Of a DNA stretch of 64,000 bases, positions 1-53,954 are shown piece after piece. The number at the start of each line of letters is the position of its first letter. Within the stretch, counting starts at the first letter, position 1. The notes below the pieces were generated by a model. It made no database searches and was not told where the DNA came from. It worked only from the letters and a program-made list of their open reading frames with translations. Both the position numbers and the translations under genes were made by a program. The stretch is from Macrostomum lignano (taxonomy: Eukaryota), in NCBI GenBank assembly GCA_002269645.1, contig NIVC01000906.1:62001-126000 (forward strand), in the 5' to 3' direction.

Positions 1-2116
1 AGATATGAAGATATACATCACACCTAATAATACAAATTACTATAAATAGCAATAGAAAGAGTAAAATATATAAACCTAGGCTCATTATTAGGGTCTATCT
101 ATTTAGACATTTAGAGATATGGTCATTTTAGTTATACACCACTAAGGGAAAGGCTATAATAAAGGCTGCCCCCTATATTATAGCTTGTAATCTAAATTAT
201 TTGCACCTTTTAAATCTCCCTTGCTATTTATTAATGTAGGTAAGGCTTAAGCCTAATCAATTTAGGCCTAATATAGACTTAGATAAAGAACAATTAAATC
301 CAATAATAAAAAATGCAAAATTCTTATTTTCTTAGCTTGACAAATTAATTAAATGTGGCAATCATAGTCTATGGTTGGTAGTCTTTGACCTCATTTTATC
401 AAACTAGCTAATAATAATGGGCTAGGCCTAATCCTATTATGTTGTACATTGTATTATAGATACAATAGGTCAATAGCCTAAAAACTATTAGCTAAGGCCT
501 AGCCTAGATAGGCTTACCAAATTTATAAGTAGGCCTAGGCTTAAATTTCTAGACACATGACTAAGACTGCCACAGCTATTACTGGCTACTAGTTTAAGCA
601 AGGAGGAGCTACCAATCTTTTATCGTTGCTATTCCTCTTATTAGGCCTAGTCATAGGTTCTTCTCTTTCAGGCTTGTTTTGCTAGCTCTCCCTATCCACT
701 CATTTTCTCTTTAGCACTATTAAATAACATATTGAGCCAAATTCCTCTCCTAGCTCCTACGTGTGGCAGTCTTGGTGTGTGGCAGTCTTGGTCATATACC
801 ATAAAATTTCTACTATATAGCTAAAAGCTAGGCTTAAACTATTTAATATAGACCTAAACTATAATTAAACTATATCATAGTATAGGGCCTACCCCTACTT
901 AATTGATAGGCTACGCCTAGACCCCTGCCCTAGGTGCTAGGTCCAAGTCATAAAAAATTAGGCCTAAGTAGGCTTAGGCCCTAGTGTAGAAACTAGGCTT
1001 TAATCTAGAAGTCTAATGAGGGGGCCTAAGAAAGAAGAATACAATACAAAAAATTCTTACTTGTTTCAGTATAGGCCTAGGCTCAATACCAACCAAACAG
1101 AAGGCCTAGGCCACATAAAATCAAAAAGAACAGAGGAGAGTCATAGAGAGGAGTTGAGAACAAATGGGGCCTTGTAAGTGAATCAAAATCAAAATCAAAA
1201 TGTATAAAAAGTATTGCCTTGTTAGGCTTTTGAGAAAATGCACAAAAATATTCATGCATGTTCTTTACTACCAATTAGGCTTCCTTTGTGCATGCACCAA
1301 TTGGCCTTAAGAAGGTTTCTCTATCAACATAGGTGAACAGGACTGCAATGGAGTGCAACGAGACCACAATGGAGTCATGGACAAAATCCTAAGTGATAAT
1401 AGATTGGATATTAAGGTTTGACTCAATTTAAACATTTTTTGCTAAATCCTATGATATAGCGCTACTGCACAAATGCAATTTATAAAATGTTTCTATTTTT
1501 TTCTATCAATTGCAAAAACATGTAGTCGCACTTTCATAAGAATTAAATTAATGTATTGATACACTTAATAAATGCACTGTTACTTAAGCTAGAAATTCTT
1601 ATTGGTAGACCTAATAAATCTTGGTCTTTAAAGAACTTTCGATTTGTTTAAACTAAGGTTGATAGTTTAAATTTTTCAGTCTTATTTTTACACCAAAACT
1701 ACTTTAGAGTTGGAAGCTTTGAGCCTCTTCACAGAAATCGATTCCAGAACCAGAATTGAGGATAATAAAATGGCACTTAAAATCATTTCAGAGTAAATGA
1801 TGTAAATGAGTAAATAAATAGGCCATTAGCTAAAGTGGTATATTACAAAAAATATAACATTCTTACAAGTTTGTTTGCAGCTAAATAATAGCTTTAAAAT
1901 TTTGGCATTCTTTCATTTTACAATCACATAGCACTGTCCTTATGGGAGTCAGGAATTTCATTATATGATCTTCCATAGAAGATAAAAAAGTTAAGTTCAA
2001 ATTGCTCCTAAAGTCAAACTTCAAAATAAGACCACCTCTAAGTATATTTTTATTGTAGTATTAAATCTTGTATCTTGTAGAAACACATAGCTTATAATCA
2101 CTTTTGTCATAGAATT

Positions 2117-2537
2117 CTGGTTGTTTCGCCCATGTACATTTTGCCCCTAGACCATTTTGCCCATAAACTAGTTTGGCAACAGGCATTTTGGCCAAAAATG
2201 TACATGTATTAGTGTTATTTCTCAGTCAGCCAGTAATGCAATACATGTGCTAATGGTCCACGGCTCACGCTCAATTTGCAATTGTAATTTTATTTAGTAT
2301 ATATTAGTATATAGATTGTTGGTATTTTAGCCCTGGAGTGGGGTGGCTACTACTATTGAACCTCGCTTATAATAAATCATATTGATGCGCACATGTTCAT
2401 TTCAACCCTGGTCCAAATTGGAGGCGAAACGGTCCATGGCCAAAATGGTCTGTGGGCGAAACAGTCTATGGGCAAAATTGTCTGGGGGCAAAATGTCCAT
2501 GGCCAAAATGGTTTATAGGCAAAATGACTGGTTACCT
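2117..2537. mobile_element. Foldback-like non-autonomous element with inverted subterminal ~17-bp repeat arrays
   Basis: Left CATTTTGCCC/GTTTCGCCC units (2120-2200) are reverse complements of right GGCAAAAT/GGCGAAAC units (2425-2530). Confidence 0.55.
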
Positions 2538-2879
2538 TATCATATTATCATTTAAATAGTAAAATTATATATAGGCCTAGGTGATTGCAAGACAAAACTG
2601 AACTCACTTTTGTCTTATGATCAATGTCTGGCGATCCTGAAGATTCCCGCGTTTAATTATTTTATGGAATTATTTTGCCCTCTATTCAAGGGTGGTGGGA
2701 GGGGGGTGGGGGTTATAATTAAACGCCGGAAACTAAGAAATCGCCCAATGTCTTTGTCTTTTAATGTGCCAAAAACAAAGATTGAAACTAAAGGTGATTA
2801 TAGTAAATGTAGTTATATTGCATGTTTAAAGTCCTATTCACAAATTTGAACTTAGTCAAGAATAAGACTTAAAACCTTT

Positions 2880-4720
2880 TTTGTGCAATGCCAATGCTTG
2901 TAGGCAGACTGTTAGGCCCTAATAATAGATAGTTCAGTCTAATGGCCTTTTGCTTTAAGGTAGCTTTTGCTATCTTCTTTAATTCTTTCTGCTTCTTCTG
3001 CATCTATTTTCTTCAATTCTTTCTGCTTCTTCTGCATCTTCTGTCACTAGCATAGCTCTTCTAGCTAGGCCTAGTCATCCTTGCCTTTCGCTGCCTTTGT
3101 CAGTTCCTTGAGTAGGGTTACATCGAATTTGTCAACATCTAATTCGTCAATAGACCTAAAATGTGAGAAATTGAGAAATTGGGGTCTCCCTAAAACACGC
3201 CCCGCACCGCCCTGCAGCGCTACACATTAAAACAAATTGGACTATAACTGAAGACACTTCAAAATGCGTTTTCTGTTAAGCTTCAAAGTTTTTATTAAAT
3301 TAAGTTTTTTTACTATGAAATATAAAATTCGGTGAATAATAAGTGATATTATTAATAATTAATAAAAAATGAAAACAAGAATATAAAAAATAGTAACAAT
3401 ATTTATAATAATAATTAAAGATATTTATTCCATTACTCGTACAACAAATAGTTTTCTTTACAATTAAATACTGCATTGACAAAAAATGTTATAATGTGTA
3501 GCGGTTCGGGGCGGTGCGGTGCGTGTTTTTTATTACTAAGTAATACTTAAATAAATAAATAAAAATTACCTGAACTATAATTTTTGCAGTTTTATTTTTA
3601 CAGCTATACATAGCTGTTGATTTTCAAAATGTTATTTTCAAAGAAAGGTTGTGTTTCACTGGCGCTAATTTTTCTTTGAGAGCAACTCATAGATTTCTTA
3701 TTGCTTAGCTTCAATGTCATCTAATTGCTAGAAAAATATATTGAAGTATCCTGCAATGTCATGGAGGCATTATGCAATGGTGACCCTGATTAGGCAGATG
3801 CTCAAAGTGGTAGTGCATTATGTAGCCTTTTTTCATAATGCAGTAATTCCCTCTCCTAACATCTTGCATTGCTTGTGCTCATGCTATAGCTATTATCATG
3901 TATTGGGTTCTGGCAAAAGATCTTACTACCATTAATCAGGCTATTGCTATCACTGCTTTGTGTACTTATCTCCTTACACTTCTTCTCTATCTCCTTAGGC
4001 CTACACTTCTCTATCTATATGTGCTTCCTCTTCTATCTCTAAATGCTTCTTCTCCTCTATCTCCACCTCCATGCCCTTTTCCTCTATCTTTTTATGATTC
4101 TTCTTTAACCCTTGTGCTTCTTTACTCTTCTATCTCCTTGTGCTTCTTCTCTTTTATCTCCTTATGCTTCTTCTCTACCATCTCTTTATGTCTCCTATCT
4201 TCTATCTCTATGTGTTTCCTCCTGTCATCACTTGCTTCTTCCTCATTCCTTCTGGCAGTAGCAATGCTGTTATTTTCTAGTTTTTTATTTTTCAATTTTC
4301 AAGTGTTTGTCTCATCATATAAAAAATTAGACAAATTGAAATCTTTATCCTCCATATGCTCTATTGCTTCATCATCCTGGCACTTCCTATCCTCTATCTC
4401 CTTGCACTTCTTCTCCTCCATCTCTTTGTCCTTATGCCTCTTCCATCTCTATGGCTATGCTTCCTATTTTCTATCTCTATATATTTCCTTGTGTCATTAT
4501 CCTTTGTTTCTTCTTTATCACTTTTGCTAATAACAACATTCTCACTCCTGCTACTGCTTGTCTCATTACCATCTGACATATTTGTTAAGTCACATCTTGA
4601 AACCTCACAGGGCTCTTTTCTTGAAATAGCAGCTTCTTGTCTTTGATATTGGGCTAGACATGCATTGTATGAATGACTTCTAGAGTATTGCCAAGAGCAA
4701 ATGGCTTTCCATTTTTGGTG
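2880..4720 (-). pseudogene. Heavily mutated coiled-coil (E/K/R-rich) coding relic, interrupted by the MITE
   Basis: Minus-strand frames read KHIEIEDRRHKEMVEKKHKEIKEKKHKEIEE, LDDIEAKQ*EIYELLSKKN and IDELDVDKFDVTLLKELTKAAK, with many stops. Confidence 0.4.
3192..3528. mobile_element. MITE-like element with about 40-bp terminal inverted repeats
   Basis: AAACACGCCCCGCACCGCCCTGCAGCGCTACACATT at about 3192-3228 is near-complementary to AATGTGTAGCGGTTCGGGGCGGTGCGGTGCGTGTTT at about 3493-3528; AT-rich noncoding interior; CpGs retained. Confidence 0.7.
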
Positions 4721-4749
4721 CACTTGGGCTCAGACTTAAAGAGCTTGAG

Positions 4750-7700
4750 AAACCTTTTAGGCACTTGTCTTTTGCAAGGTTAAATAACTTAAGTGTCACC
4801 TTTAGTTGAGCACACTTATCTTAAATTTAAACCAACTAGGATCATGCTCACCCTGCTGTAAGCACAGAATGCATACCTGATCATATAGAGATAATGGAAG
4901 GATTATTATCAAAATTGTTAATTAATATTTTAATATTATTAAGATTTTTTAAATTGCAATTTTTATTTTACTTTTAAAACAATTTAATTTGCATTTCAAT
5001 TTTTTTAACTAAGCTTTTTTCAAAATAAATTACTTTTTTAAACCTTTGAGATTAAAAAAATACTAAGAAAAACAAATTTAAAATATGAAATGTAAAAATA
5101 TTACAAATAATTTTTATTTAGATTTCTAAATTTCTAAGTTCCTTGATGTTCTTACTTGGCCTCAGAGCAAGGTACACAGAAGTTTCAATACATACTAGGC
5201 CTTTTTCCTACATTGTTCAGATTTGAGTTCAACAACCATTAGCTTTGCATACATATCTGCTAGTGATCATGTTTTCAAAAAGTCTTCTAAATGCCTAAGG
5301 CAAAAATTCCTATTCTTGAAAAGTTCAAAGGCTTGCTATAAAATGGTTCCTTTTGTAAAAATCATTAGAACACAAGTATAACTTTATAGTCTTGAGACCT
5401 TTGAAGAATTGCTACTAGCTTGCAAGCAACTACACTTGTGTTTTTGCATAACAAAATAAGCATCCTGTCAATGCAAACTTAGCATAATGTTAGCCTTGAC
5501 TTGAACTCGCCTAAACTGAAAATAACCATCAAAGCCAGGTGGTTTAGGGTAGATGTTCTATATTGGCTATATACCTTGGTGCCAACATTGCAACTCAACC
5601 TAAAAAGAGTGGTCAGTTCTACAAGGAGCATCTGTTTCTAGAAAAACTACTGTTCTAGCTTCCCTGCAGTATGTACTTTTTGTTGTGCAGTAGTCCCACA
5701 AAAAGTAACCTGTGTGGTCAATAGCATTATTCACAAATTTCTTGTAGGAAGATTCTATACAATTTACTTTAGCTCCACTAGCACCATTTTTCCTTGTAGG
5801 GAATGCTAGATAACTCAGTTAACATTTAAAACTTGCTTACAAAGTCCTGCAAAAATTCTATTGAAGCTGTTGGCTAGTTTTTTTCCAAAGTATATACCAA
5901 TGACAAAGATACAGTTTTTAATGTTCTTAATAGCACCTAGAGTGACCCAATAAGTTTTTTCTGAACTTTTGAAAAGTCATGCCATCAACATTTATAATCA
6001 AAGAAATTGTATCAGTAGGGTAAATCAGTTCACACTTAATCAGAAATTTCAATTCCAATAGCAATGCCAAAGTGATAATAATGGCCAGGGTCTCACTTCT
6101 TTTAGAGATACTGGTTGAATTGCAGGTTTAAGTAATGTCCAGTAATCCTTTGGAAGTTCTGGAATTACTTTGCAAAAAATCCTAAGCAGTTTCTTACTAG
6201 AAATGCAGGAAGGTTAATCTTGATAAAGTATTCTTTCAACAATGGCTTTATCACATCATAGGCATTATCAGTATTATCTGATTCATCTAATTCAATTGTA
6301 GTTATATCAAACTTGGATAAGCTTTTTTTAAAAAGGCTTGACAGCTTGCAATGGTGCATACCTCATCAATAGTTCCTGCCAGGCTTGGTGCAATGTAGAT
6401 TGGATATTGCTAATTTCTTATTAGCTTGGCACAGGCTATCAATGACAAGTAGACAATAGAATTGAAAAGGTAAATGTCTAATGACAAAGTAATAAAGACA
6501 ACTTAAAATTGAGATGATATACTGCAAAACTTCTTGACTGAACTAAGGCAAGAGGGAGGTTCTCACTTATAGGATGGCTGAAACAAATTGCACCTTAACA
6601 CAACATAATAGAATTGCACCAGTGCTTACAATATGGCATGACTAAAGTTCTCTAAGTTAGAACTAAAAAGGGGAGGTCATGCCTACAAGAGGCAAGGCTG
6701 CAGTTCTATTTTTAGAAACTGAATCCAAGATTTCCTCAAATGGCACAAGGGTCTACATGCAAACAAATTTGCTACTGTACAAGCAGACCAAAAGTACAGG
6801 CTAGATGCGCTGTACTTTTCACAAAATAATGCTAGGCTGACCTTGTCACTGGCTCATAAGGCTGGAAAAAGAGGACAGACAGACAATAAACAAACCAAGA
6901 GTAGCCCAAGCTAATAGGCTCAGAGGCTGCCAACAAGAATACAAAGGAGGAAAGGGATAAGGCATAGATGGCAATCTTGCTAAGGATGACTGGGGTGCAT
7001 CTAGCCATATGCCTGGTTACGCAGTGGGCAACACTCTGCAGCACTACCAGATAAGCCAGGCTTTGAAGGGCTGCATTGGCAAGGTCAATCAATTGCACAA
7101 TCAAAGGCATCTTGTTGGCTTTGATCTAGGAGCATACACATCTGAGTCTAGTTAGGTTATTGTAAGATTGGCTGGGCTCCGTTGTTGGCAACAATGGCAA
7201 AACAAGCAGCCAGGTAGATGGCAGCTGCCTCCACTTTGGTTGCCAGATCCAGTTCAAGAGCAGCCAGCAGGGTTATAGTTTCTAAAAGGTCAGCCTAGGC
7301 AATGGCATCGACCTAGCCTATAGTCTCCAATGTGTTGGGTGGCGCCATTGGGAAAGCCTGCTAAAGTTTATTTTGACTGTATATTAATGGCTTGTCTATC
7401 TGAGGTCTAGATGGCAACTTCTCGGAGGGGGACTGCTAGGTCAGATGATTATTAGCAGTTGTGTAGAGCTAGGCCTATCCCAGCCTGGGGAGGCTAAGAT
7501 AAGGCCAAAGTCTGGCCCACCATTACAAGCTGTTGTAGCCTTAGTTGCAGCCACCAGGGTGGGTATAGACACTATCGCCGCAGCCATAGGGGCCCAATCG
7601 TTGACTAAGCTTGGCCCAGGGCATGGCACTGAACAGTAGTTGTTGGCAGTTGCCCTAGCATTTTCTGGGCATGTGGTAAAGTGGCAAGCTAAGAACTATT

Positions 7701-7900
7701 GGAGGTTGAAAAAAGTGCCAAGCTTGGCAATCTCTATATGCCAAGCTATATACCATGAAGGCATTCCAAGCCCCTCTGTATGCCAAGTTGTATGCCAATA
7801 ATATACTTTGATCCTTCTATACACTAGAATTTACCATTGGTATAGCTTTGCCTTTAGTGCCTAAATGGCATTATGAATGAATGATCAAAATGTTCCTGGC
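4750..7900. mobile_element. Decayed, CpG-depleted TE-like sequence; possible non-LTR reverse transcriptase relic
   Basis: Plus-strand fragments SLDLNSPKLKI, IYLGANI and LASLQYVLFVV (about 5490-5700) loosely resemble late RT motifs but need frameshifts; no intact YADD seen. Confidence 0.25.
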
Positions 7901-9022
7901 TTCTTTCACGGAGTTACAGTCTAGGAGTCTGTCATAAATTATGTGTCTCTGCAGCATGAATTTATTTTTTAGAGGATTCTCCTTTTTTATTTGGCATTAT
8001 AATTTTCAATTTTCCCTCACTTTACAATCTGCAATGCACTCCATATTGTGGATCATATTGGATGCATTCTGGAATGTATACCAGGGAGTTTTTTGTTTGC
8101 ACACTTACTATATGCTATGCTCACTGACTACACACCATGCAGATTGCAGACCATTGACAATAATTAAAAATAAACCATAGGCATAAGCATTATATTACAA
8201 ATATGTTTTGTTGCAAAAATGTATTTTTATTTATTAGTAAAAGCAAACAAGATAAAGTAGATTTATGGGTATTTTTAAAACTCAAGAAGACTGCCTCTCT
8301 GACAATCATACTATACCACACATTATATCCTATCAAGCTAGCTCATGCTATTCCATGGCATAGCATGCCACTATGCCACATACCCAATGCATGCCAATAC
8401 ACTTCATTCAATTAGCCTTAAGCAGTTGTTTCATAGACAATAAAATTTTTCTATACCTAAAAATTTGCTTTGCTACCTCGCAACCTCAAGGTTTTGCTTT
8501 GGAGTTATTGCCTTATTAGCAAACATTGTTTTAAAATTCCTCAATTTACAAAAATTGCTTTTAGACAAATAAACAAGGACTAGAGATTGTGAATGATTTT
8601 ATTTGTTTTACTAGGAGGTTTTTTGGGTCCTTATGCTTGCCACTATTTTCCATGCTAAAGGCCATCTTTCTGACTATGCTCATAAGAATTTTTGTCTTGC
8701 ATACTCTGTATAGGAACATAGGATGTTAAATTAAATTTATTGTATATAAACTTGTATAGGCAATAGTTAAGAAAGTATAATTTGTCATAGAAGACAACCA
8801 ACTTTTGTTTGAATAATGGAAGACTTAAAAAATATTTTAAAGAAATTAATGATTGATGAAAATGATTTTTTAATAAGTTTACATTTATGCAAGTATTATA
8901 ATGAATGCAAATGCAATACCTAGTCATTTTTTGTATGAAACATAATTACCTTGACTTTTTCTTTCCTTAGATAGCAATAGTAAGTCTATATATGTATCAT
9001 TGTCATGCATGATTATTGAATA

Positions 9023-9314
9023 ATGGATAAAATGTTTATATTGCTGATTATCTGCATTCAATTGATTTCTGTTGGTTATTTGCAAGCTGCAACAGCAGGT
9101 GCCAATAACAATGATGAGGCATTGAAAGATATATTTAAGTCTTTACTGCCAAAAGATTTCCTAGAAAAGCAATTTGCCAAAGATGCCAAAAAGAATAGTA
9201 AATCTACAAAGACTTCTGGCAAAGCAATGCAAAATCTGATTCATGGTTTTGAAAATGTACTTGAAAGTCTTGCTGCACCTGACAATGGCAATTGCGTATA
9301 TAAGTGCCCTAATG
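9023..9314 (+). CDS. PLA2G12: Group XII secreted phospholipase A2, exon 1 (signal peptide ... CVYKCPNG)
   Basis: ATG at 9023; hydrophobic N-terminus MFILLIICIQLISVGYLQA; CxYKC motif typical of group XII sPLA2; donor G|GTGAGT at 9315 (phase 1). Confidence 0.85.
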
Positions 9315-9364
9315 GTGAGTGCTGTATGCTAAAGTAATATAGTAATTAATTCTGACTCCTGACT

Positions 9365-10095
9365 ATCCTTAGGCCTATCCCAAACTGACTCTCACTGCCC
9401 CCACTGACTCTCACCCCCCCTCACTGACTCTCACTCCCCCCTCACTGACTCTCACTGCCCCCCACTGACTCGCATTGCCTTCCACTGACTCTCACTGCCC
9501 CCCCACTGACTCTCACTGCCTCCCACTGACTCTCACTGCCCCCCCCACTGACTCTCACTGCCCCCCACTGACTCTTACTGCCCCCCCACTGACTCTCATT
9601 GCCCCCCACTGACTCTCACTGCCCCCACTGACTCTCACTGCCCCCACTGACTCTCACTGCCCCCCACTGACTCTTACTGCCCCCCCCACTGACTCTCATT
9701 GCCTTCCACTGACTCTCACTGCCCCACTGACTCTCATTGCCCCCCACTGACTCTCATTGCCCCCCCCCACTGACTCACTGCCCCCCACTGACTCTCACTG
9801 CCCCCCCCACTGACTCTCATTGCCCCCCCACTGACTCTCATTGCCCCCCCCACTGACTCACTGCCCCCCACTGACTCTCACTGCCCCCCCCACTGACTCT
9901 CATTGCCTCCCCACTGACTCTCACTGCCCCCCACTGACTCTCACTGCCCCCCACTGACTCTCATTGCCCCCCCACTGACTCTCATTGCCCCCCCACTGAC
10001 TCTCACTGCCCCCCACTGACTCTCACTGCCCCCCCACTGACTCTCATTGCCTCCCCACTGACTCTCACTGCCCCCCTCACTGACTCTCCCCCCAC
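9365..10095. repeat. Minisatellite, ~18-20 bp CCCCACTGACTCTCA(C/T)TG, PLA2G12 intron 1
   Basis: Direct tandem periodicity; ends about 15 nt before the acceptor. Confidence 0.95.
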
Positions 10096-10112
10096 TCTCC
10101 TTTTCCCCGCAG

Positions 10113-10180
10113 GGGCAACTCCCAAGGCCAAGCCTAATCACAAAGTAGTGCCAAACGGGTGCGGCTCTCACGGCTTTAAG
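10113..10180 (+). CDS. PLA2G12: PLA2G12 exon 2 (ATPKAKPNHKVVPNGCGSHGFK)
   Basis: Acceptor CCCCGCAG| (phase 1), donor AAG|GTAAAT (phase 0); NGCGS calcium-loop motif of group XII sPLA2. Confidence 0.9.
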
Positions 10181-10266
10181 GTAAATCAAAAATCACTAAT
10201 TTACGTTGGTCTACAGTATTATAAAGGAATTCTATATTCTCATAATCCCTGGTATGGCACCCGCAG

Positions 10267-10441
10267 CCCGATGTGTCAGCTTTCCCTGGCCTGACAGATT
10301 GCTGTAATAAGCACGACATCTGCTATGGCACCTGCGGTAGGGGTCAGGCCGTGTGCGACCGCAGCTTCAATGCCTGCATGGCCGACTCGTGTGAGCAGAT
10401 GCGCAAATCTGGAGCCATCAAATCTGATGAGGCTCTGACAG
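10267..10441 (+). CDS. PLA2G12: PLA2G12 exon 3 (catalytic CCNKHDICYGTC)
   Basis: Acceptor CCGCAG| phase 0; His-Asp dyad retained; CDxxFxxCM motif; donor G|GTGGGA phase 1. Confidence 0.92.
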
Positions 10442-10469
10442 GTGGGACACTCAATGCGTGTTGCTGAGC

Positions 10470-11325
10470 TAACTGGGTGTCAGCTGGGTTAAATCGTTTG
10501 TCAGATGGGTTAAATTGGGTGTCAGCTGGGTTAAATTGGGTGTCAGCTGGGTTAAATTAGGTGTCAGGTTGATTAAATTTGGTGTCAGCTGCGTTAAATT
10601 GGGTGTCAGCTGGGTTAAATTGGGTGTCAGGTTTGTTAAATTGGGTGTCAGGTTGGTTAAATTGGGTGTCAGGTTTGTTAAATTGGGTGTCAGGTTGGTT
10701 AAATTGGGTGTCAGGTTTGTTAAATTGGGTGTCAGGTTGGTTAAATTGGGTGTCAGGTTTGTTAAATTGGGTGTCAGCTGGGTTAAATTGGGTGTCAGGT
10801 TGGTTAAATTGGGTGTCAGGTTGGTTAAATTGGGTGTCAGGTTGGTTAAATTGGGTGTCAGGTTGGTTAAATTGGGTGTCAGGTTTGTTAAATTGAGTGT
10901 CAGGTTGGTTAAATTGGGTGTCAGGTTGGTTAAATTGGGTGTCAGGTTGGTTAAATTGGGTGTCAGGTTGGTTAAATTGGGTGTCAGGTTTGTTAAATTG
11001 AGTGTCAGGTTGGTTAAATTGGGTGTCAGGTTGATTAAATTGGGTGTCAGGTTGGTTAAATTGGGTGTCAGGTTGGTTAAATTGGGTGTCAGGTTGATTA
11101 AATTGGGTGTCAGGTTGATTAAATTGGGTGTCAGGTTGGTTAAATTGGGTGTCAGGTTGATTGAATTGGGTGTCAGGTTGATTAGATTGGGTGTCAGGTT
11201 GATTGAATTGGGTGTCAGGTTGATTAGATTGGGTGTCAGGTTGATTGAATTGGGTGTCAGGTTGATTAAATTGGGTGTCAGGTTGATTAAATTGGGTGTC
11301 AGGTTGGTTAAATTGGGTGTCAGAG
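10470..11325. repeat. Minisatellite, 21 bp TTAAATTGGGTGTCAGGTTGG, PLA2G12 intron 3
   Basis: Tandem periodicity. Confidence 0.95.
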
Positions 11326-11438
11326 TGGTTTTAAGGCTATCTCCTGCTAGGCTTCACAAGTGTCAGATTGGCTAAATCACATCCACGTGTCAGACTGTCA
11401 GGTGTGCCAAATTGTGTCAAACTGTTGCATCATTCCAG

Positions 11439-11576
11439 AATGCCGGGCCACCGCTGCCGCCTTCCACCTGACTGTGGTGTCGGTGGGCTGCCAGTTCTAC
11501 CGCGAGGCCCAGGCCAGCGCTTGCGTGTGCGGCGGCGCCGGAGAGAAGCCTACAGGTTCAACTGCTCAGGACAAAA
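11439..11576 (+). CDS. PLA2G12: PLA2G12 exon 4 (ECRATAAAFHLTVVSVGCQFYREAQASACVC...)
   Basis: Acceptor CATTCCAG| phase 1; matches group XII C-terminal GCxxYxxxQxxACxC; donor A|GTGAGC at 11577. If unspliced, the frame stops at 11590. Confidence 0.88.
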
Positions 11577-11619
11577 GTGAGCGGCATTGAGCTGGCTTTT
11601 CAGTGATTAGCGTTTGACC

Positions 11620-11955
11620 CGGGTGGCTCTGGGTCTGGGGATCTGGGAGGGAGGTCTGGGGATCTGGGAGGGAGGTCTGGGGATCTGGGAGGGAGGTGTG
11701 GGGATCTTGGAGGGAAGTATGGGGATCTGGGAGGGAGGTATGGGGATCTGGGAGGGAGGTGTGGGGATCTTGGAGGGAGGTATGGGGATCTTGGAGGGAG
11801 GTATGGGGATCTGGGAGGGAGGTATGGGGATCTGGGAGGGAGGTATGGGGATCTGGGAGGGAGGTATGGGGATCTGGGAGGGAGGTATGGGGATCTGGGA
11901 GGGAGGTATGGGGATCTGGGAGGGAGGTATGGGGATCTGGGAGGCTGGCCCAGCA
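11620..11955. repeat. Minisatellite, 21 bp GGGATCTGGGAGGGAGGTATG
   Basis: Tandem periodicity; starts about 45 nt after the 11577 donor. Confidence 0.95.
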
Positions 11956-12339
11956 GAGGGAATCTGGGAGCTTAATTGCACTGATGAATTGCTATTTTGC
12001 ATGCTCTACAGAATTTGCCTGGCTGTCTTGTTCGCATGAAGCAGAGACTGTAAATTACTGTTATTATTGTAATTTTTTTAAGTACAGAATTTACTTTTAA
12101 CAACCACGAAAATGATTTACTGATTTACAGAAAACAAAACAGGTCATTGAGTGAGTTGCGCCCCTTGAATATTTGTTTGTTACTCTTGCTTTAATGGCTT
12201 AGATTATTTAATGTCAGGTTTCGGTTTATTTGTTTCCATTCTTCAGGTGGTTAAGTAACGATATTAGGTGTTCTGACAACCTGCTAAGGTTTTTATGCTA
12301 TTCTTTCAGAAATTTTACACATCTCTTTAGTCACAGATT

Positions 12340-12990
12340 CTGAGCCAGCCTCCCAGGTCCCCAGATTCTGGGCCAGCCTTCCAGATCCTCAGTTGCTGGA
12401 CCAGCCTCCCAGATCCTCAGTTGCTGGACCAGCCTCCCAGATCCTCAGTTGCTGGACCAGCCTCCCAGATCCTCAGTTGCTGGACCAGCCTCCCAGATCC
12501 TCAGTTGCTGGACCAGCCTCCCAGATCCTCAGTTGCTGGACCAGCCTCCCAGATCCTCAGTTGCTGGACCAGCCTCCCAGATCCTCAGTTGCTGGACCAG
12601 CCTCCCAGATCCTCAGTTGCTGGGCCAGCCTCCCAGATCCTCAGTTGCTGGGCCAGCCTCCCGGATTCCCAGTTGCTGGGCCAGCCTCCCAGATCCTCAG
12701 TTTCTGGGCCAGCCTCCCAGATCCCCAGTTGCTGGGCCAGCCTCCCAGATCCCCAGTTGCTGGGCCAGCCTCCCAGATCCTCAGTTGCTGGGCCAGCCTC
12801 CCAGATCCCCAGTTGCTGGGCCAGCCTCCCGGATCGTCAGTTGCTGGGCCAGCCTCCCGGATCCCCAGTTGCTGGGCCAGCCTCCCGGATCGTCAGTTGC
12901 TGGGCCAGCCTCCCGGATCCCCAGTTGCTGGGCCAGCCTCCCGGATCGTCAGTTGCTGGGCCAGCCTCCCGGATCCTCAGTTGCTGAGGT
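12340..12990. repeat. Minisatellite, 28 bp CCAGCCTCCCAGATCCTCAGTTGCTGG(A/G)
   Basis: Tandem periodicity; inverted relative of the 11620 array. Confidence 0.95.
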
Positions 12991-13004
12991 TATTGAGTTG
13001 CCAG

Positions 13005-13237
13005 ATGCCAAATTCTCGTGTTTAAAACACATCAGTAGAATAGATGCACTTCGAGCTGCATCACACAGCACTGCCCCATCATCCTCCCCATTTCATGCAG
13101 TCCGCCAGTTCAATGAAGAGCAGAGGGCAAAGGAGGCGGCCCAGCCAGCACCCAGCATCGAGGACCTGCTTGACAACATCGACCTGTCTGATTCCTTGTT
13201 TGACCTTCCCGAAGCGGTGGATCATGACGAACTTTGA
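13005..13237 (+). CDS. PLA2G12: Probable PLA2G12 terminal exon ending ...PEAVDHDEL* (ER-retention signal)
   Basis: Acceptors TTGCCAG| (13004) and GAATAG| (13043) are both in phase with the 11577 donor; frame ends HDEL-TGA; vertebrate group XII proteins end in KDEL-like motifs. Exact acceptor uncertain. Confidence 0.6.
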
Positions 13238-13844
13238 TTGGCGTTAAATGTTTTTTGTTTTAATTTGGCTCCGGTTTTAATTCAAAGATTCAAATGTTAT
13301 TTTTATTCGAAGAAATTTATTTATTTTAGTATATATTGCTACATTTCTCTCGATCTTGTTCCGTTATGCTACTTTAAGTAAGCTAATACTTCAGTAGTAT
13401 TATTTTTCCTGTTTCTTTGTTTTTATGAGCTAATTGGAATTTTTTCAGCGGTTAAACATTCCTTATAAATCGTGTTGGGCTATGTAAACTTTTTATAAAT
13501 ATCTATGCTGCTATAAATGTAGCTCATATAATCTATCTGAATTGGTGTTTCGAAGGCTCAAATTATTTTTGCAATTTGCAACTGAGTCGAATTTAACAAA
13601 TAGTGAATGAAAAATTGAATTCGTTTTTTAAATATATTTTCATAGAAAGAGCATGCAGACATGTACTTTTATGCAGGAGACAGCAGTGCAGATGCACTCT
13701 AAGTTGATTTGTATGCAGTGCTATAAAATAACAATTAGAAAACCATTAAAAGTACTTGGCATTACGGGGCCCTACATGCGCACACGCAATATATTAATAA
13801 TGAGGCTGAATGTTTCTTTAAAATAAATATTTTCTCAAATGAGC

Positions 13845-14171
13845 TCATGATGCCGGAGTCCCTGCGGGTGGATCTGGCAGTGGGTAGCCATTGTTGCCGG
13901 TTCCGTAGGCCACAGTAGATGGATAGATAGTCTGGTAGTGAGGCTGGAACTGCTGATGAGGCTGCTGCAGTGCAGCTGCGTAGCTCTGGTAGGAGCTGGC
14001 TAGATATGCTGCATCGTAGAGTTGCTGTTGAAATGGTGGTTGCTGCTGCCGGTCTTCCGGCTGTTGAAGGTGCTGCTGATGCGTCTCCTGATGCGGCAGC
14101 TGAGGAGGCTGACCGCTGTTCCTAAGCTTTTCCTCGCGGCGCCACTTTGCTCGGCGATTTGAGAACCAGAC
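13845..14171 (-). CDS. Pax6: Pax6 last coding exon (VWFSNRRAKWRREEKLRN... Q/Y-rich tail)
   Basis: Acceptor AACAG| phase 0; homeodomain helix 3 with Ser50; open to TGA at 13845-13847. Absent from the ORF track because it has no start codon. Confidence 0.92.
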   Translation of the reverse strand, partial: VWFSNRRAKWRREEKLRNSGQPPQLPHQETHQQHLQQPEDRQQQPPFQQQLYDAAYLASSYQSYAAALQQPHQQFQPHYQTIYPSTVAYGTGNNGYPLPDPPAGTPAS

Positions 14172-14299
14172 CTGTTGGTTATTAATTTGGGCGGCTGTTG
14201 AATGCCTTTCAGGTGTACATGTACGACTTAGCTTGATGCTCAGCCAAATTATTTAGGTTTTGTTAATCGTCCCTAAACTTAAGCTGCTCAAGAAAATGT

Positions 14300-15475
14300 C
14301 CCTGCGCCAATCAAGAATCGCCCCTAAACCAGTCAATAATCGCTCCTGAACTAGTCAAGAATCGCCCCGGCCCCCTGAACTACTCAATAATCGCCCCTGA
14401 GCCAGTCAAGAATCGCTGCTGAGCCAGTCAAGAATCGCCCCTGACTGAACCAGTCAAGAATCGCCCCTGACTAAACCAGTCAAGAATAGCCCCTGACTAA
14501 ACCAGTCAAGAATCGCCCCTGAATGAACCAGTCAAGAATTGCCCCTGACTGACCTAGTCAAGAATCGCCCTGAACTACTCCAGAATCGCCCCTGAACCAG
14601 TCAAGAATCGCCCCAGAGCTAGTCAAGAATCGCCTCTGACTGTACCAGTCAAGAATCGCCCCTGAGCCAGTCAAGAATCGCTCCTGAGCCAGTCAAGAAT
14701 CGCCTCTGACTGAACCAGTCAAGAATCGCCCCTGAACTACTCAAGAATCGCCCCTAACTGAACCAGTCAAGAATCGCTCCTGACTGACCCAGTCAAGAAT
14801 CGCCCTGAACTACTCCAGAATCGCCCCTGAACCAGTCAAGAATCGCCCCTGACTGACCCAGTCAAGAATCGCCCCTAACTTACCCAGTCAAGAATCGCCC
14901 CTAGCTTACCCAGTCAAGAATCGCCCTGAACTACTCCAGAATCGCCCCTGAACCAGTCAAGAATCGCCTCTGACTGACCCAGTCAAGAATCGCCCCTGAG
15001 TGAACCAGTCAAGAATCGCCTTTGACAGTCAGTCAAGAAACGCCCCTGAGACAGTCAAGAATCGGCTCTGACCGTACCAGTCAAGAATCGCCCCTGAGCC
15101 AGTCAAGAATCGCCTCTGACTGTACCAGTCAAGAATCGCCCCTGAGCCAGTCAAGAATCGCCTCTGACTCTACCAGTCAAGAATCGCCCCTGAGCCAGTC
15201 AAGAATCGCTCCTGAGCCAGTCAAGAATCGCCTCTGACTGAACCAGTCAAGAATCGCCCCTGAGCCAGTCAAGAATCGCCTCTGACTGAACCAGTCAAGA
15301 ATCGCCCCTGAGCCAGTCAAGAATCGCCTCTGACTGAACCAGTTAAGAATCGCCTCTGACTGAACCAGTCAAGAATCGCCCTGAGCCAGTCAAGAATCGC
15401 CTCTGACTGAACCAGTCAAGAATCGCCCCTGAGCCAGTCGAGAATCGCTCCTGAACCAGTCAAGAATCGCCCCTG
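14300..15475. repeat. Minisatellite, variable ~24-28 bp CCAGTCAAGAATCGCCCCTGA, Pax6 intron
   Basis: Tandem periodicity filling most of the intron. Confidence 0.95.
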
Positions 15476-17846: not shown

Positions 17847-17972
17847 AATTATTTTTTTCAACGAAAGCTTAAATTGAATTGTAGAAAAAACAAAAAAATA
17901 ACCTAAATATTTTGAATACCCTACTCAGAACCCATGCTAACAGTAGTATCATTAACATATTCAGTTTCCCAC

Positions 17973-18477
17973 CTCCTACTACGCTGCCTCCGGCGCAGGC
18001 CTCATCTCCATCCTCGTCTGCTGCTGCCGTTGACTTGGCGTTCGCCGCTGCCGCTGCCTGCACCGCTGCAGCCGCCGCCGCCTGCTGGAAGCCGTTGAGG
18101 GCCGCGGCAGCGAAACCGGCGGCTGACACAGCAGCTTCGGGGTGCTGATGCTGCTGCTGTTGCTGTTGGTGCAGTTGATAGGGCTCCGCTGGTGTCTGGT
18201 TTGGCTGTTGGTCCTCCTGCTGCTGCTGCTGCTGCTGGGCCTGAGTCTGCGCGTACCACGCGGCATGCGCCTGGCTCCAGTGGCCTCCCAGCAGGTGCAG
18301 CTTGTCGTACACCGCGCCGCCGCCACTGAAACTTGCAGCGGCTGCGGCTGCGGCGGCGGCTGCTGCGGCTGCTGCTGCAGCGGTGGCCTGGGGATGGTGC
18401 GAGTCTCCGCTGCTGTGGCTGCCAGCGGCCGCTGCTTCGGTGGACAGGTTGCGAAGAACCCGATTGATGGAGGACAC
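17973..18477 (-). CDS. Pax6: Pax6 linker exon (VSSINRVLRNL...YDKLHLLGGHW...WY, poly-A/poly-Q)
   Basis: Acceptor TTCCAG| phase 0, donor G|GTGGGA phase 1; end of paired domain plus the Pax6 linker motif YDKL. Confidence 0.92.
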
Positions 18478-32134: not shown

Positions 32135-33051
<917 letters not shown>

Positions 33052-38829: not shown

Positions 38830-41090
38830 ATCCTCTCTCTCTCTCTGCCTGTCTCACCCTCTCTCTGCCTGTCTCACCCTCTGTTTGCCTGTCTCACCCT
38901 CTCTCTGCCTGTCTCACCTTCTGTTTGCCTGTCTCACCCTCTCTCTGCCTGTCTCACCCTCTCTCTGCCTGTCTCACCCTCTGTTTGCCTGTCTCACCCT
39001 CTCTTTGCCTGTCTCACCCTCTTTCTCCCTGTCTCACCCTCTTTCTCCCTGTCTCACCCTCTTTCTCCCTGTCTCACCCTCTTTCTCCCTGTCTCACCCT
39101 CTTTCTCCCTGTCTCACCCTCTCTCTCTGTGTGTTATCCTCTCTCTGCCTGTCTCACCCTCTGTTTGCCTGTCTCACCCTCTGTTTGCCTGTCTCACCCT
39201 CTCTTTGCCTGTCTCACCCTCTCTCTGCCTGTCTCACCCTCTGTTTGCCTGTCTCACCCTCTGTTTGCCTGTCTCACCCTCTCTTTGCCTGTCTCACCCT
39301 CTGTTTGCCTGTCTCACCCTCTCTCTGCCTGTCTCACCCTCTGTTTGCCTGTCTCACCCTCTGTTTGCCTGTCTCACCCTCTCTCTGCCTGTCTCACCCT
39401 CTCTTTGCCTGTCTCACCCTCTGTTTGCCTGTCTCACCCTCTGTTTGCCTGTCTCACCCTCTCTTTGCCTGTCTCACCCTCTCTCTGCCTGTCTCACCCT
39501 CTGTTTGCCTGTCTCACCCTCTGTTTGCCTGTCTCACCCTCTCTTTGCCTGTCTCACCCTCTCTTTGCCTGTCTCACCCTCTCTCTGCCTGTCTCACCCT
39601 CTCTTTGCCTGTCTCACCCTCTCTTTGCCTGTCTCACCCTCTCTTTGCCTGTCTCACCCTCTGTTTGCCTGTCTCACCCTCTCTTTGCCTGTCTCACCCT
39701 CTCTTTGCCTGTCTCACCCTCTGTTTGCCTGTCTCACCCTCTCTTTGCCTGTCTCACCCTCTCTCTGCCTGTCTCACCCTCTCTTTGCCTGTCTCACCCT
39801 CTCTCTCTCTCCTTGTCTCACCCTCTCTCTCTCTCCCTGTCTCACCCTCTATCTCTCCCTGTCCTACCCTCTATCTCTCACTGTCTCACCCTCTATCTCT
39901 CCCTGTCCTACCCTCTATCTCTCACTGTCTCACCCTCTATCTCTCCCTGTCCTACCCTCTATCTCTCACTGTCTCACCCTCTATCTCTCACTGCCTGTCT
40001 CACCCTCTGTTTGCCTGTCTCACCCTCTCTCTGCCTGTCTCACCCTCTGTTTGCCTGTCTCACCCTCTCTCTGCCTGTCTCACCCTCTCTCTGCCTGTCT
40101 CACCCTCTGTTTGCCTGTCTCACCCTCTGTTTGCCTGTCTCACCCTCTTTTGCCTGTCTCACCCTCTGTTTGCCTGTCTCACCCTCTGTTTGCCTGTCTC
40201 ACCCTCTCTTTGCCTGTCTCACCCTCTCTCTGCCTGTCTCACCCTCTGTTTGCCTGTCTCACCCTCTCTTTGCCTGTCTCACCCTCTGTTTGCCTGTCTC
40301 ACCCTCTGTTTGCCTGTCTCACCCTCTCTCTGCCTGTCTCACCCTCTGTTTGCCTGTCTCACCCTCTGTTTGCCTGTCTCACCCTCTCTCTGCCTGTCTC
40401 ACCCTCTCTTTGCCTGTCTCACCCTCTGTTTGCCTGTCTCACCCTCTGTTTGCCTGTCTCACCCTCTCTTTGCCTGTCTCACCCTCTCTCTGCCTGTCTC
40501 ACCCTCTGTTTGCCTGTCTCACCCTCTCTTTGCCTGTCTCACCCTCTCTTTGCCTGTCTCACCCTCTCTTTGCCTGTCTCACCCTCTCTCTGCCTGTCTC
40601 ACCCTCTCTTTGCCTGTCTCACCCTCTCTTTGCCTGTCTCACCCTCTCTCTGCCTGTCTCACCCTCTCTTTGCCTGTCTCACCCTCTCTTTGCCTGTCTC
40701 ACCCTCTCTTTGCCTGTCTCACCCTCTGTTTGCCTGTCTCACCCTCTCTTTGCCTGTCTCACCCTCTCTCTGCCTGTCTCACCCTCTCTTTGCCTGTCTC
40801 ACCCTCTCTCTCTCTCCTTGTCTCACCCTCTCTCTCTCTCCCTGTCTCACCCTCTATCTCTCCCTGTCCTACCCTCTATCTCTCACTGTCTCACCCTCTA
40901 TCTCTCCCTGTCCTACCCTCTATCTCTCACTGTCTCACCCTCTATCTCTCCCTGTCCTACCCTCTATCTCTCACTGTCTCACCCTCTATCTCTCACTGTC
41001 TCACTCTCTTTCTCTGTCTGTCTCACCCTCTATCTCTCACTGTCTCACTCTCTTTCTCTGTCTGTCTCACCCTATCTCTCTCCGGTGTCT
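38830..41090. repeat. 20-bp CT-rich TGCCTGTCTCACCCTCT minisatellite with a higher-order duplication
   Basis: Tandem periodicity; variant block at about 39780-40000 recurs at about 40800-41080. Confidence 0.96.
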
Positions 41091-53270: not shown

Positions 53271-53437
53271 TTAATCCAACACTTTAATCTGTCGCTTCAA
53301 GGCAATTCCTGGCGTAATGAACTTTTTTAATAAGCCATAAAAACTAAGAAAAACACTTCGGATGCTACTGATAGATGATGGATTAGTAGTGCACATAGAA
53401 TATTAACGAAAAGAAGTAAAGAAAGAGCAATACTCAC

Positions 53438-53919
53438 CTATCATAGCTACTCTCCTCGCTCTCCTCTTCCAAATCCAGCTCCAGAATCACCGCCTCCATA
53501 TCCTCCTCGTTAGTTTTCAACTGGGCCATCAGACTGAGCCTCTGCAGGTGCAGGAATGGCAGATTTAAAAACCGATGAATATACTTTAATCCGTAGCCGT
53601 TTCGCATGGAAGATTCGGCATAGCGAGTGGATTCTAGCGGCCGGCCGCTCTGCATTATGACAGACCGGGCCTGGGCCTCCGTGACACTCCGGTGGGCGCC
53701 CATGTCCCTGTGATTGGCCAGCACCAGCACTGGCAGACTTGCAGGCACCTGAGGCAGTTCGCGTTCAACGTAGGCCAAAGTCCAAGCCTTGGTCATGTCC
53801 AGCACTAGGATGACGCCGTGACAGCCTTTGTACACGTCCACCCACTCGGCGTCCAGCACCGGCTCCGTGGGTCGGCCTTTCGGTCGGCGGCTTTTGTCCA
53901 CTACGTCCCACACTTCTAC
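53438..53919 (-). CDS. RABL6: RABL6 exon 2 (GTPase-like core)
   Basis: VEVWDVVDK...LDAEWVDVYKGCHGV...RYAESSMRNGYGLKYIHRFLNLPFL; acceptor TCGCAG|, donor AG|GTGAGT phase 2. Confidence 0.94.
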
Positions 53920-53954
53920 CTGCGAGGTGGGGGGTTGAAGGGGGTTCTGTGATA

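What the first reader, a model, noticed from the sequence alone, without database searches (positions are those of the whole stretch)
1..9000. CpG-void, CTAG/TA-enriched domain: possible RIP-like or methylation-driven hypermutation in an animal
Seen: by manual count the first ~1.1 kb has about 20 CTAG but about 3 CG; the same texture runs through 2880-3180 and 3560-9000, while neighbouring genes are CpG-rich. The relic at 2880-4720 reads EMVEKKHKEIKEKKHKEIEE, readable as an EMEEKKRKEMEE repeat after CGY>CAY and ATG>ATA changes; the latter is a CpA-context change on the other strand. Established: plain CpG deamination gives TG/CA and then stops; CpA>TpA accumulation is the hallmark of fungal RIP. 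Inference: a repeat-directed C>T process acting beyond CpG may have operated on this domain.
Basis: partly seen in the sequence, partly recalled or inferred. Interest (0 to 1): 0.72.

Follow-up and report, generated by a model that had tools for sequence, protein, structure and literature searches.

The report
CpG- and CpA-eroded flatworm DNA block
A 9-kb non-coding stretch beside a phospholipase gene of the flatworm Macrostomum lignano has lost nearly all its CG pairs; sister copies show C still changing to T there roughly 15-30 times faster before G and about 3 times faster before A than in the DNA next door, which points to local DNA methylation, not a fungus-style repeat-killing system.

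Summary
The window is Macrostomum lignano DNA (contig NIVC01000906.1). Positions 1-9320 are an AT-rich (35% GC), non-coding, transposon-riddled block. It ends inside intron 1 of a PLA2G12-like gene.

The counts are right: 20 CTAG and 3 CG in the first 1.1 kb, and CpG o/e 0.0-0.2 elsewhere. TA and CTAG enrichment is confined to the first 1.1 kb. The other 8.2 kb shows CpG loss matched by TpG/CpA gain (deficit 204, excess 206).

Two paralogous copies share the CpG-void state. In window-versus-paralog alignments, 45% of CpG sites differ, against 1.5% for ordinary transition sites. C/T sites followed by A differ 2.9 times more often than other sites (p about 1e-5). The equally duplicated CpG-normal flank shows neither effect. 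Polarised changes are CpA>TpA 15, TpA>CpA 2.

A simulation with CpG 30x and CpA 3-6x reproduces both textures.

So a C>T process reaching beyond CpG is supported. It is slow, confined to this block and not triggered by duplication, so it is not RIP. The best reading is germ-line cytosine methylation (the species keeps DNMT1 and DNMT3) at CpG, more weakly at CpA, followed by deamination.

The "protein relic" is a decaying 21-24-nt minisatellite. All of this rests on one locus, and no methylation data were available.

The parts
1..9320 (.). CpG-void, AT-rich (35% GC) non-coding block. The left edge lies beyond the window: at least 981 more bases of the contig are also CpG-void. The right edge lies in intron 1 of the PLA2G12-like gene.
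   Evidence: CpG o/e 0.0-0.2 outside young insertions. The state is shared by paralogs L001 and L003. CpG and CpA hypermutability appear in paralog alignments.
1..1110 (.). TA/CTAG-rich, CpA/TpG-poor sub-block. TAGGC-type words already occur about 250 b upstream of the window. It passes the fungal RIP composition indices.
   Evidence: CG 3/33, CA+TG 89/126, TA 164/118 (observed/expected). TpA/ApT is 1.46, (CpA+TpG)/(ApC+GpT) is 1.00 and the composite is +0.46. Surviving C is followed by A 20%, C 30%, G 1%, T 49%. No other copy exists in the held sequence.
543..809 (.). MITE-like insertion with 32-nt inverted arms. It carries 2 of the 3 CpG of the first kb.
   Evidence: Inverted repeat I3; CpG positions 624 and 760.
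2124..2508 (.). Inverted-repeat element built of 16-nt subrepeats (GGCGAAACGGTCCATG type). It carries 8 CpG. Its subrepeats show CG>CA/TG and CCAT>CTAT variants.
2630..2745 (.). Small inverted repeat carrying 6 CpG.
   Evidence: Inverted repeat I4; CpG list.
3183..3529 (.). CpG-rich MITE with 43-nt inverted arms. It is absent at this site in L001. L001 has another copy elsewhere, flanked by an 11-bp direct repeat, and that copy has lost several CpG.
3967..4470 (-). Decaying 21-24-nt minisatellite. Its units form the series GCGC > GTGC/GCAC > ATGC/ACAC > ATAC > ATAT.
   Evidence: TRF and repeat families; unit table with the L001 orthologues; no protein homologue and no Pfam match.
6098..6747 (.). 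650-bp segment present in the window and L003 but absent from L001.
9020..9314 (+). Exon 1 of the PLA2G12-like gene. It lies inside the eroded block: GC 34%, 1 CpG against 8.6 expected.
   Evidence: The exon model reproduces NCBI protein PAA75043.1 exactly. Pfam PF06951 is recorded for the product.
9384..10088 (.). Intron-1 minisatellite (20-nt unit, nearly CpG-free) just past the right edge of the block. L001 and L003 have CpG-rich sequence here instead.
10113..13237 (+). Exons 2-5 of the PLA2G12-like gene (10113-10180, 10267-10441, 11439-11576, 13101-13237). GC is 55-66% and CpG o/e 0.57-0.80. The protein ends in HDEL.

Best explanation
Window 1-9320 is old, non-coding, transposon-riddled DNA upstream of a PLA2G12-like gene of Macrostomum lignano, and it includes that gene's exon 1. 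Cytosines in this block are under a local, context-dependent C>T regime. Relative to other transitions, change is very fast at CpG (roughly 15-30x) and moderately raised at CpA (about 3x per site).

Shown:
- the composition;
- the CpG and CpA excess in paralog comparisons;
- the C>T direction;
- the restriction to this block;
- its persistence after the duplication.

Inferred:
- The cause is dense germ-line 5-methylcytosine laid down by the DNMT1/DNMT3 system that this species retains. Methylation would be mainly at CpG with weaker CpA methylation, followed by spontaneous deamination.
- Most of the block is at an intermediate stage: CpG is gone and its TpG/CpA products are still present.
- The first 1.1 kb is close to the end state of the same regime: CpA/TpG depleted, TpA, CTA, TAG and CTAG enriched, and C surviving only before C or T.
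- Younger MITE insertions still carry their CpG.

It is a slow erosion, not a burst, and sequence duplication does not trigger it.
For: Organism and setting:
- The PLA2 product is 98-100% identical to M. lignano proteins.
- The window is identical to NIVC01000906.1.
- M. lignano keeps DNMT1 and DNMT3 and has low-level 5mC (PMC11292947 and PMC9246332, both citing Wasik 2015).

Composition:
- In w1111-9320 the CpG deficit (204) equals the CpA+TpG excess (206).

Shared ancestry:
- L001 and L003 are CpG-void over the orthologous stretches.
- Insertions private to one copy have CpG o/e 0.6-1.1.

Substitutions, window versus L001 over w3526-9320:
- CpG: 10 sites differ and 12 are conserved (45%).
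- C/T before A: 4.3%. Before C: 1.5%. Before T: 1.5%.
- Transversions: 0.9%.

Same comparison in CpG-normal spacers at 10-22 kb:
- CpG: 2.6% differ.
- C/T before A: 0.9%. Other contexts: 1.1-1.4%.
- Transversions: 0.7%.
- Fisher p = 3e-6 for the share of before-A transitions, block against flank.

Further support:
- C/T-before-A is the largest transition class in all four long BLAST segments of the diverged part.
- The excess holds for every 5' neighbour, 3.3-5.0%.
- Direction: CpA>TpA 11 against TpA>CpA 2 on the window and L003 lineages (p = 0.004), and 4 against 0 for L001 in the conversion patch.
- The 24-nt repeat units and the 16-nt subrepeats show the same stepwise series.
- Simulation from flank-like DNA. 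With CpG 30x alone, GC stays at 0.41 with CA/TG 1.39 and TA 0.88. With CpA 3x, early time points resemble w1111-9320. With CpA 6x, equilibrium gives CA/TG 0.73, TA 1.39, CTAG 3.2x and RIP product index about 1.4, which resembles w1-1110.
Against: - This is one locus. The CpA signal rests on about 48 substitutions and the CpG ratio on about 22 site-strands.
- No methylation data could be consulted. Wasik 2015 is not held, and the genomic pattern of 5mC in this species is described as unknown (PMC9246332).
- Most window-L001 differences cannot be polarised. T is carried 24 times by each copy.
- The first 1.1 kb has no paralog coverage and no other copy in hand. Its texture could be native to an unidentified element.
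- The simulation does not explain the 8-mer TAGGCCTA: 10 copies against 0.2 in first-order Markov simulations.
- Variants within minisatellite arrays of the flank show little CpG excess. That fits an unmethylated flank, but the test is weak.
- Relative to zero-order expectation, w1111-9320 shows no net TpA gain. A gain appears only against the TpA-poor genomic background.
Confidence: 0.6

Rival explanations
1. Plain CpG methylation decay only. The block is a methylated compartment that lost CpG to TpG/CpA. The CpA-context excess is a locus-specific fluke or an unrecognised context effect of AT-rich DNA. The first 1.1 kb is a natively TA/CTAG-rich element built around TAGGCCTA-type words.
For: The CpG deficit equals the CpA+TpG excess and TpA is not enriched in 88% of the block. 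TAGGCCTA is far above any dinucleotide-based expectation and is conserved among paralogs, so at least part of the CTAG excess is a real repeated word. The data come from a single locus.
Against: The excess of transitions at C/T before A has p about 1e-5 within the block and p = 3e-6 against the flank. It appears in four separate alignment segments and with every 5' neighbour. It is not shared by C/T before T in the same AT-rich DNA. The direction is C>T, 15:2. CpG-only decay leaves GC near 0.41 in simulation, not 0.35.
Confidence: 0.27
2. RIP-like repeat-induced point mutation: a duplication-triggered, premeiotic C>T burst acting on repeated DNA, as in filamentous fungi.
For: w1-1110 passes the usual RIP indices: TpA/ApT 1.46, (CpA+TpG)/(ApC+GpT) 1.00, composite +0.46. 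CpA>TpA changes are in excess between paralogs. The locus exists in at least three, and probably four, copies.
Against: The adjacent PLA2 gene and minisatellite flank are duplicated in the same copies and show no excess. The CpG-void state is shared by all copies, so it predates the duplication. Divergence between copies is only 2-4%, with background transitions and transversions equal to the flank, so there was no burst. CpG is hit much harder than CpA, the reverse of Neurospora RIP (own knowledge). w1111-9320 fails the indices: substrate 1.57, composite -0.65. No RID-type enzyme is known in animals (own knowledge).
Confidence: 0.03
3. Native or foreign composition. The block derives from a CpG-poor source such as a large transposon, a viral insertion or a horizontal transfer, and simply kept that composition.
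For: There is a sharp compositional step (GC 35% to about 50%) within intron 1. The block is rich in mobile-element insertions.
Against: No protein-coding remnant was found. All six frames of 4701-8100 and the composite 'relic' translation have no Pfam match, and the relic has no homologue among 5.8 billion proteins. CpG sites in the block are still being lost after the duplication, 45% against 1.5%. The block includes a functional host exon whose composition matches it.
Confidence: 0.05
4. Decayed CpG-free minisatellites. The block is the wreck of old tandem arrays whose units happened to lack CG, like several CpG-free arrays elsewhere in the window.
For: 49% of w9321-64000 is made of arrays, and some have zero CpG, for example 38839-41077 and 32136-33051. 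3967-4470 is such a decaying array.
Against: Apart from 3967-4470 no periodicity remains. The ancestral unit of that array did contain CpG: GCGC is kept in L001. This idea does not explain the CpG and CpA hypermutability between paralogs.
Confidence: 0.05

Closest known systems
5mC-driven CpG depletion in methylated genome compartments (vertebrate bulk DNA; 'mosaic' methylation of invertebrates)
   Same: CpG deficit balanced by TpG/CpA excess. CpG sites are hypermutable in sequence comparisons. Unmethylated-looking neighbours keep their CpG. The organism has DNMT1 and DNMT3.
   Different: Depletion is more extreme (o/e about 0.03-0.1, against about 0.2 in vertebrates, own knowledge). The compartment is an intergenic, transposon-rich block plus a first exon, not the body of a housekeeping gene. 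There is an added CpA-context component. Methylation itself has not been observed here.
Repeat-induced point mutation (RIP) of filamentous fungi
   Same: C>T transitions in CpA context. The first 1.1 kb reaches RIP-positive composition indices. The result is AT-rich, TpA-rich DNA.
   Different: It is not tied to duplication, since equally duplicated flanks are spared. It is slow, not a burst. CpG is hit harder than CpA. It occurs in an animal, with no known RID-type enzyme.
Non-CpG (mainly CpA) methylation by DNMT3-type enzymes, known in vertebrate neurons, oocytes and stem cells (own knowledge)
   Same: The preference order is CpG far above CpA, then CpT/CpC. The effect depends on the 3' neighbour and not the 5' neighbour. 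YAG, YAC and YAT triplets are more affected than YAA (3.7, 3.3, 2.8 against 1.6%).
   Different: Here only the mutational footprint is seen, in the germ line of a flatworm. No CpA methylation has been measured in this species.

Membership tests
Methylation-driven CpG decay domain | CpG deficit matched by TpG/CpA excess | tested here: met
   w1111-9320: CG 48 against 252 expected (deficit 204); CA+TG 1139 against 933 (excess 206).
Methylation-driven CpG decay domain | CpG sites mutate much faster than other sites in comparisons of related copies, and only inside the domain | tested here: met
   Window versus L001: 10 of 22 CpG site-strands differ (45%) against 1.5% for C/T before C or T. In the flank, 12 of 464 (2.6%) against 1.1-1.4%.
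Methylation-driven CpG decay domain | The organism has maintenance and de novo cytosine-5 methyltransferases | not testable with these tools
   Literature only: DNMT1 and DNMT3 are conserved and 5mC is low in M. lignano (PMC11292947, PMC9246332).
Methylation-driven CpG decay domain | 5mC is actually present on this DNA in the germ line | not testable with these tools
The primary paper is not held.
Non-CpG (CpA) methylation footprint | C>T excess at CpA that depends on the 3' neighbour and not the 5' neighbour, co-located with the CpG effect | tested here: met
   C/T before A 4.3% against 1.5% for other contexts. AYA 5.0, CYA 4.9, GYA 3.3, TYA 3.8%. Absent in the flank. Direction C>T is 15:2.
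Non-CpG (CpA) methylation footprint | Measured 5mC at CpA | not testable with these tools
   Needs bisulfite or long-read modification calls.
RIP (repeat-induced point mutation) | Composition: TpA/ApT high, (CpA+TpG)/(ApC+GpT) low, composite index above 0 | tested here: inconclusive
   Met in w1-1110 (1.46 / 1.00 / +0.46). Not met in w1111-9320 (0.92 / 1.57 / -0.65). Thresholds are from my own knowledge of the fungal literature.
RIP (repeat-induced point mutation) | Mutation is confined to, and triggered by, duplicated sequence | tested here: not met
   The flank is duplicated in the same contigs yet shows no CpG or CpA excess. The eroded state is shared by all copies, so it is older than the duplication.
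RIP (repeat-induced point mutation) | Burst-like hypermutation: copies heavily diverged by transitions | tested here: not met
   Copies differ by 2-4%. Background transitions (1.5% against 1.3%) and transversions (0.9% against 0.7%) equal those of the flank.
RIP (repeat-induced point mutation) | RID/Masc1-type methyltransferase-like enzyme | not testable with these tools
   The proteome of the species was not searched. No such enzyme is known in animals (own knowledge).
Protein-coding pseudogene ('relic' at 2880-4720) | Similarity to a protein or domain family | tested here: not met
   No hit among 5.8 billion proteins. No Pfam family. The peptide periodicity comes from a 21-24-nt DNA repeat.

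The most novel reading that the evidence does not exclude
A free-living flatworm has a genomic compartment in which cytosine methylation at CpA as well as CpG is mutagenic in the germ line. Without any dependence on repeats, this drives DNA to the TpA-rich, CpA-poor, RIP-index-positive composition otherwise known only from fungal RIP. The first 1.1 kb of the window would be that end state. The process would be strong enough to reshape a functional first exon.
Probability: 0.3. Interest if true: 0.7.

Novelty: new variant of a known kind. Interest (0 to 1): 0.5.

Why it matters
A 2022 review (PMC9246332) states that the genomic pattern of DNA methylation is unknown for any free-living flatworm. 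This locus gives sequence-level evidence that M. lignano has a sharply bounded, heavily C>T-eroded compartment next to DNA that looks unmethylated.

The erosion reaches CpA. If that holds genome-wide, it would be a rare case of non-CpG methylation leaving a germ-line mutational footprint in an animal.

It would also caution that RIP composition indices can be met without RIP.

The claim is directly testable with existing M. lignano assemblies and bisulfite or long-read data.

Tried and rejected
- **Coding relics.** I translated 4701-8100 in six frames with X at stops and searched Pfam: nothing. The stop density of the apparent long frame at 5150-6400 is what random 33%-GC DNA gives, so I dropped the idea of a transposase relic.
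- **TAGGCCTA as an excision footprint** of a TA-targeting transposon with GG...CC ends. At w3996 the word replaces a 24-nt unit that L001 has. But none of the polymorphic insertions has such ends, so this stays untested speculation.
- **TAGGCCTA as a deaminated CAGGCCTG.** No CAGGCCTG occurs anywhere in the window.
- **Other copies of w1-1300.** None in the window or the three loci.
- **Sampling more of the genome through the mariner relic at 43.5 kb.** The hits were mostly sea-slug proteins and the only M. lignano entry has no contig. This cost one protein search.
- **Variants within flank minisatellites as a polarised control.** Low power: no CpA excess and only a mild CpG excess.
- **The 8%-divergent patch of L003 (w6951-7350) as local hypermutation.** Changes run in both directions, so it is a gene-conversion tract from a fourth copy.
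- **Rfam and tRNA scans of 1-14500.** Nothing.
- **Literature.** Wasik 2015 is not held. A full-text search for TAGGCCTA gave only unrelated papers.
Full report
**What the window is.** A spliced model at 9020-13237 (+) reproduces NCBI protein PAA75043.1 of Macrostomum lignano residue for residue. This is a PLA2G12-family phospholipase (Pfam PF06951) ending in HDEL. The window is 100% identical to contig NIVC01000906.1 of assembly GCA_002269645.1, and window position 1 is position 982 of locus L002. On the minus strand from about 14170 lies the last exon of a paired-type homeobox gene (sub-threshold homeodomain end). From memory its peptides resemble Pax6. From 9.3 kb onward, 49% of the sequence is at least 40 unrelated minisatellite arrays separated by unrelated spacers.

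**The observation.** CpG stays nearly absent to about 9320. In 4001-9000 there are 12 CpG against 161 expected. 28 of the 51 CpG in 1-9400 lie in four MITE or inverted-repeat blocks (543-809, 2124-2508, 2630-2745, 3183-3529).

The TA/CTAG texture, however, is local to the first 1.1 kb.
- In 1-1110, TpA o/e is 1.4 and CpA+TpG o/e is 0.71.
- In 1111-9320, TpA o/e is 0.85 and CpA+TpG o/e is 1.22. CTAG (41) is close to its trinucleotide expectation (37.5).
- By the usual fungal RIP indices (thresholds from my own knowledge), 1-1110 passes (1.46 / 1.00 / +0.46) and 1111-9320 fails (0.92 / 1.57 / -0.65).
- In 1111-9320 the CpG deficit (204) equals the CpA+TpG excess (206), the arithmetic of simple CpG decay.

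**The 'relic'.** The peptide string exists. It is the translation of a 21-24-nt tandem repeat at 3967-4470. The composite translation of 2880-4720 has no homologue among 5.8 billion proteins and no Pfam family. 4701-8100 has no Pfam match in any frame. An orthologous unit in paralog L001 keeps GCGC (Arg codon CGC on the minus strand) where the window has GTGC (His). The units form the series GCGC > GTGC/GCAC > ATGC/ACAC > ATAC > ATAT. The 16-nt subrepeats at 2124-2508 show the same kind of steps.

**Paralogs.** The PLA2 protein cluster led to two further loci of the same assembly.
- L003 (NIVC01000953.1) is at least 99.5% identical to the window over 1586-9420. The exceptions are a 400-bp patch (w6951-7350, 8% divergent, changes in both directions), which I read as gene conversion from a fourth copy, and a private 2.5-kb insertion.
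- L001 (NIVC01000831.1) is 93-99% identical, with several private insertions and deletions.
- Both are CpG-void over the orthologous stretches, so the state predates the duplication.
- Insertions private to one copy have CpG o/e 0.6-1.1.

I tabulated window-versus-L001 substitutions by dinucleotide context, counting both strands and requiring identical flanks.

| Measure | Block, w3526-9320 | CpG-normal spacers, 10-22 kb |
|---|---|---|
| C/T before A | 48/1115 = 4.3% | 0.9% |
| C/T before C | 1.5% | 1.1% |
| C/T before T | 1.5% | 1.4% |
| CpG site-strands differing | 10 of 22 = 45% | 12 of 464 = 2.6% |
| Transversions | 0.9% | 0.7% |

- The excess at C/T before A has p = 1e-5 within the block and p = 3e-6 against the flank.
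- It is seen in each of the four long BLAST segments of the diverged part.
- It survives removal of the tandem-repeat stretch.
- It holds with every 5' neighbour, 3.3-5.0%. That argues against an APOBEC/AID-type enzyme and against a general AT-rich 'breathing' effect, because C/T before T is not raised.
- Background rates are equal inside and outside the block. The block is therefore not older or generally hypermutated. It has two extra context-specific classes.

**Direction.** Majority-rule polarisation on the short window and L003 branches gives CpA>TpA 11 against TpA>CpA 2 (p = 0.004 after allowing for site numbers). For L001 inside the conversion patch, where a fourth lineage serves as reference, it gives 4 against 0. 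Most window-L001 differences remain unpolarised: T is carried 24 times by each copy.

**Quantitative closure.** I simulated flank-like DNA (GC 0.46) under equal background rates.
- With CpG>TpG at 30x alone, it settles at GC 0.41, CA/TG 1.39, TA 0.88 and CTAG 1.1x.
- Adding CpA>TpA at 3x gives early states like w1111-9320: CpG 0.12-0.15, CA/TG 1.26-1.32, TA 0.85-0.94.
- At 6x the equilibrium has GC 0.30, CA/TG 0.73, TA 1.39, CTAG 3.2x and RIP indices about 1.4 / 0.74. This is close to w1-1110.
- In w60-1110 without the MITE, surviving C is followed by A 20%, C 30%, G 1% and T 49%, as such a regime predicts.
- The simulation shows consistency. It does not prove that the first kb had this history. 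That stretch has no paralog coverage and no other copy in hand.

**Mechanism.** M. lignano retains DNMT1 and DNMT3 and has low overall 5mC (PMC11292947, PMC9246332, PMC10658182, all citing Wasik 2015, which is not held). The simplest cause is dense germ-line methylation restricted to this block, followed by deamination. Methylation would be at CpG, with weaker CpA methylation of the kind DNMT3 enzymes produce (own knowledge). The right boundary falls in intron 1 at about 9320-9380 in all three copies. Exon 1 (GC 34%, 1 CpG against 8.6 expected) shares the block's composition, whereas exons 2-5 have GC 55-66% and CpG o/e 0.57-0.80.

**Why it is not RIP.**
- The flank is duplicated in the same copies yet is spared.
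- The eroded state is older than the duplication.
- There was no burst.
- CpG is affected far more than CpA.

**Limits.** This is one locus, with about 50 informative CpA-context substitutions and about 22 CpG site-strands. No methylation data were available. The left boundary is unknown. The 8-mer TAGGCCTA remains unexplained: 10 copies in 9.3 kb against 0.2 in first-order Markov simulations, and 11 of the 14 AGGCCT in the block have exactly these flanks.

**Verdict.** The CpA component, the extreme depletion and the flatworm setting make it a new variant worth a genome-wide check.

Noticed in passing
window 263, 423, 530, 642, 959, 1072, 2572, 3066, 3996, 7470, 9370 (and 48500): The palindromic 8-mer TAGGCCTA occurs 10-11 times in the first 9.4 kb (0.2 expected from first-order Markov simulations) and once in the other 54.6 kb. 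11 of the 14 AGGCCT in the block have exactly T before and A after. Some copies share longer words (TAGGCCTAGTCAT, TAGGCCTATCCCA). Most are conserved in the paralogs. At 3996 it replaces a 24-nt repeat unit that L001 has. Its origin is unexplained.
   Followed up: partly
window 9321-64000: About 49% of this stretch consists of at least 40 different minisatellite arrays (units 4-36 nt, 0.3-2.2 kb each). They lie in introns and between genes, and the spacers between them are unrelated to each other. Arrays differ between paralogs: the intron-1 array at 9384-10088 is replaced by CpG-rich sequence in L001 and L003.
   Followed up: partly
window 1331-3182, versus L001 1-1844 and L003: This segment is 98.9-100% identical in all three paralogous copies, while the rest of the block differs by 3-7% from L001. 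This suggests recent gene conversion between copies. L003 also carries a 400-bp patch (window 6951-7350) that is 8% divergent from both others, apparently converted from a fourth copy.
   Followed up: partly
L003 2116-4642; L001 1845-4379, 4948-5492, 5724-6469; window 3183-3529, 6098-6747, 8253-8715: The block is a hot spot of insertions and deletions that differ between paralogs. They include a 2.5-kb non-autonomous element with perfect 40-bp terminal inverted repeats (L003 only). They also include a CpG-rich MITE (GGGTCTCCCTAAAACACGCC... ends) flanked by an 11-bp direct repeat in L001.
   Followed up: partly
window 43534-44087 (+), flanked by 34-37-nt repeats at 43024-43272 and 44293-44381: This is a frameshifted mariner-type transposase relic (Pfam Transposase_1, DDE_3). 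Its closest named protein relatives in the database are from the sea slugs Elysia crispata and E. marginata (58-71% identity overall among the top hits), closer than the one listed M. lignano entry (58%).
   Followed up: no
window 13840-14170 (-) and 17869-18477 (-): These are exons of a paired-type homeobox gene. Peptides SSINRVLRNL and VWFSNRRAKWRREEK resemble Pax6 from memory. Its introns are filled with minisatellites. It is not among the genes called for this contig stretch in the collection.
   Followed up: no
window 53434-53950 (-) and 61801-62604 (-): The first is a Ras/Rab-like GTPase C-terminal exon whose open frame runs on into the 21-nt minisatellite at 53957-55289. The second is an ankyrin-repeat ORF.
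   Followed up: no
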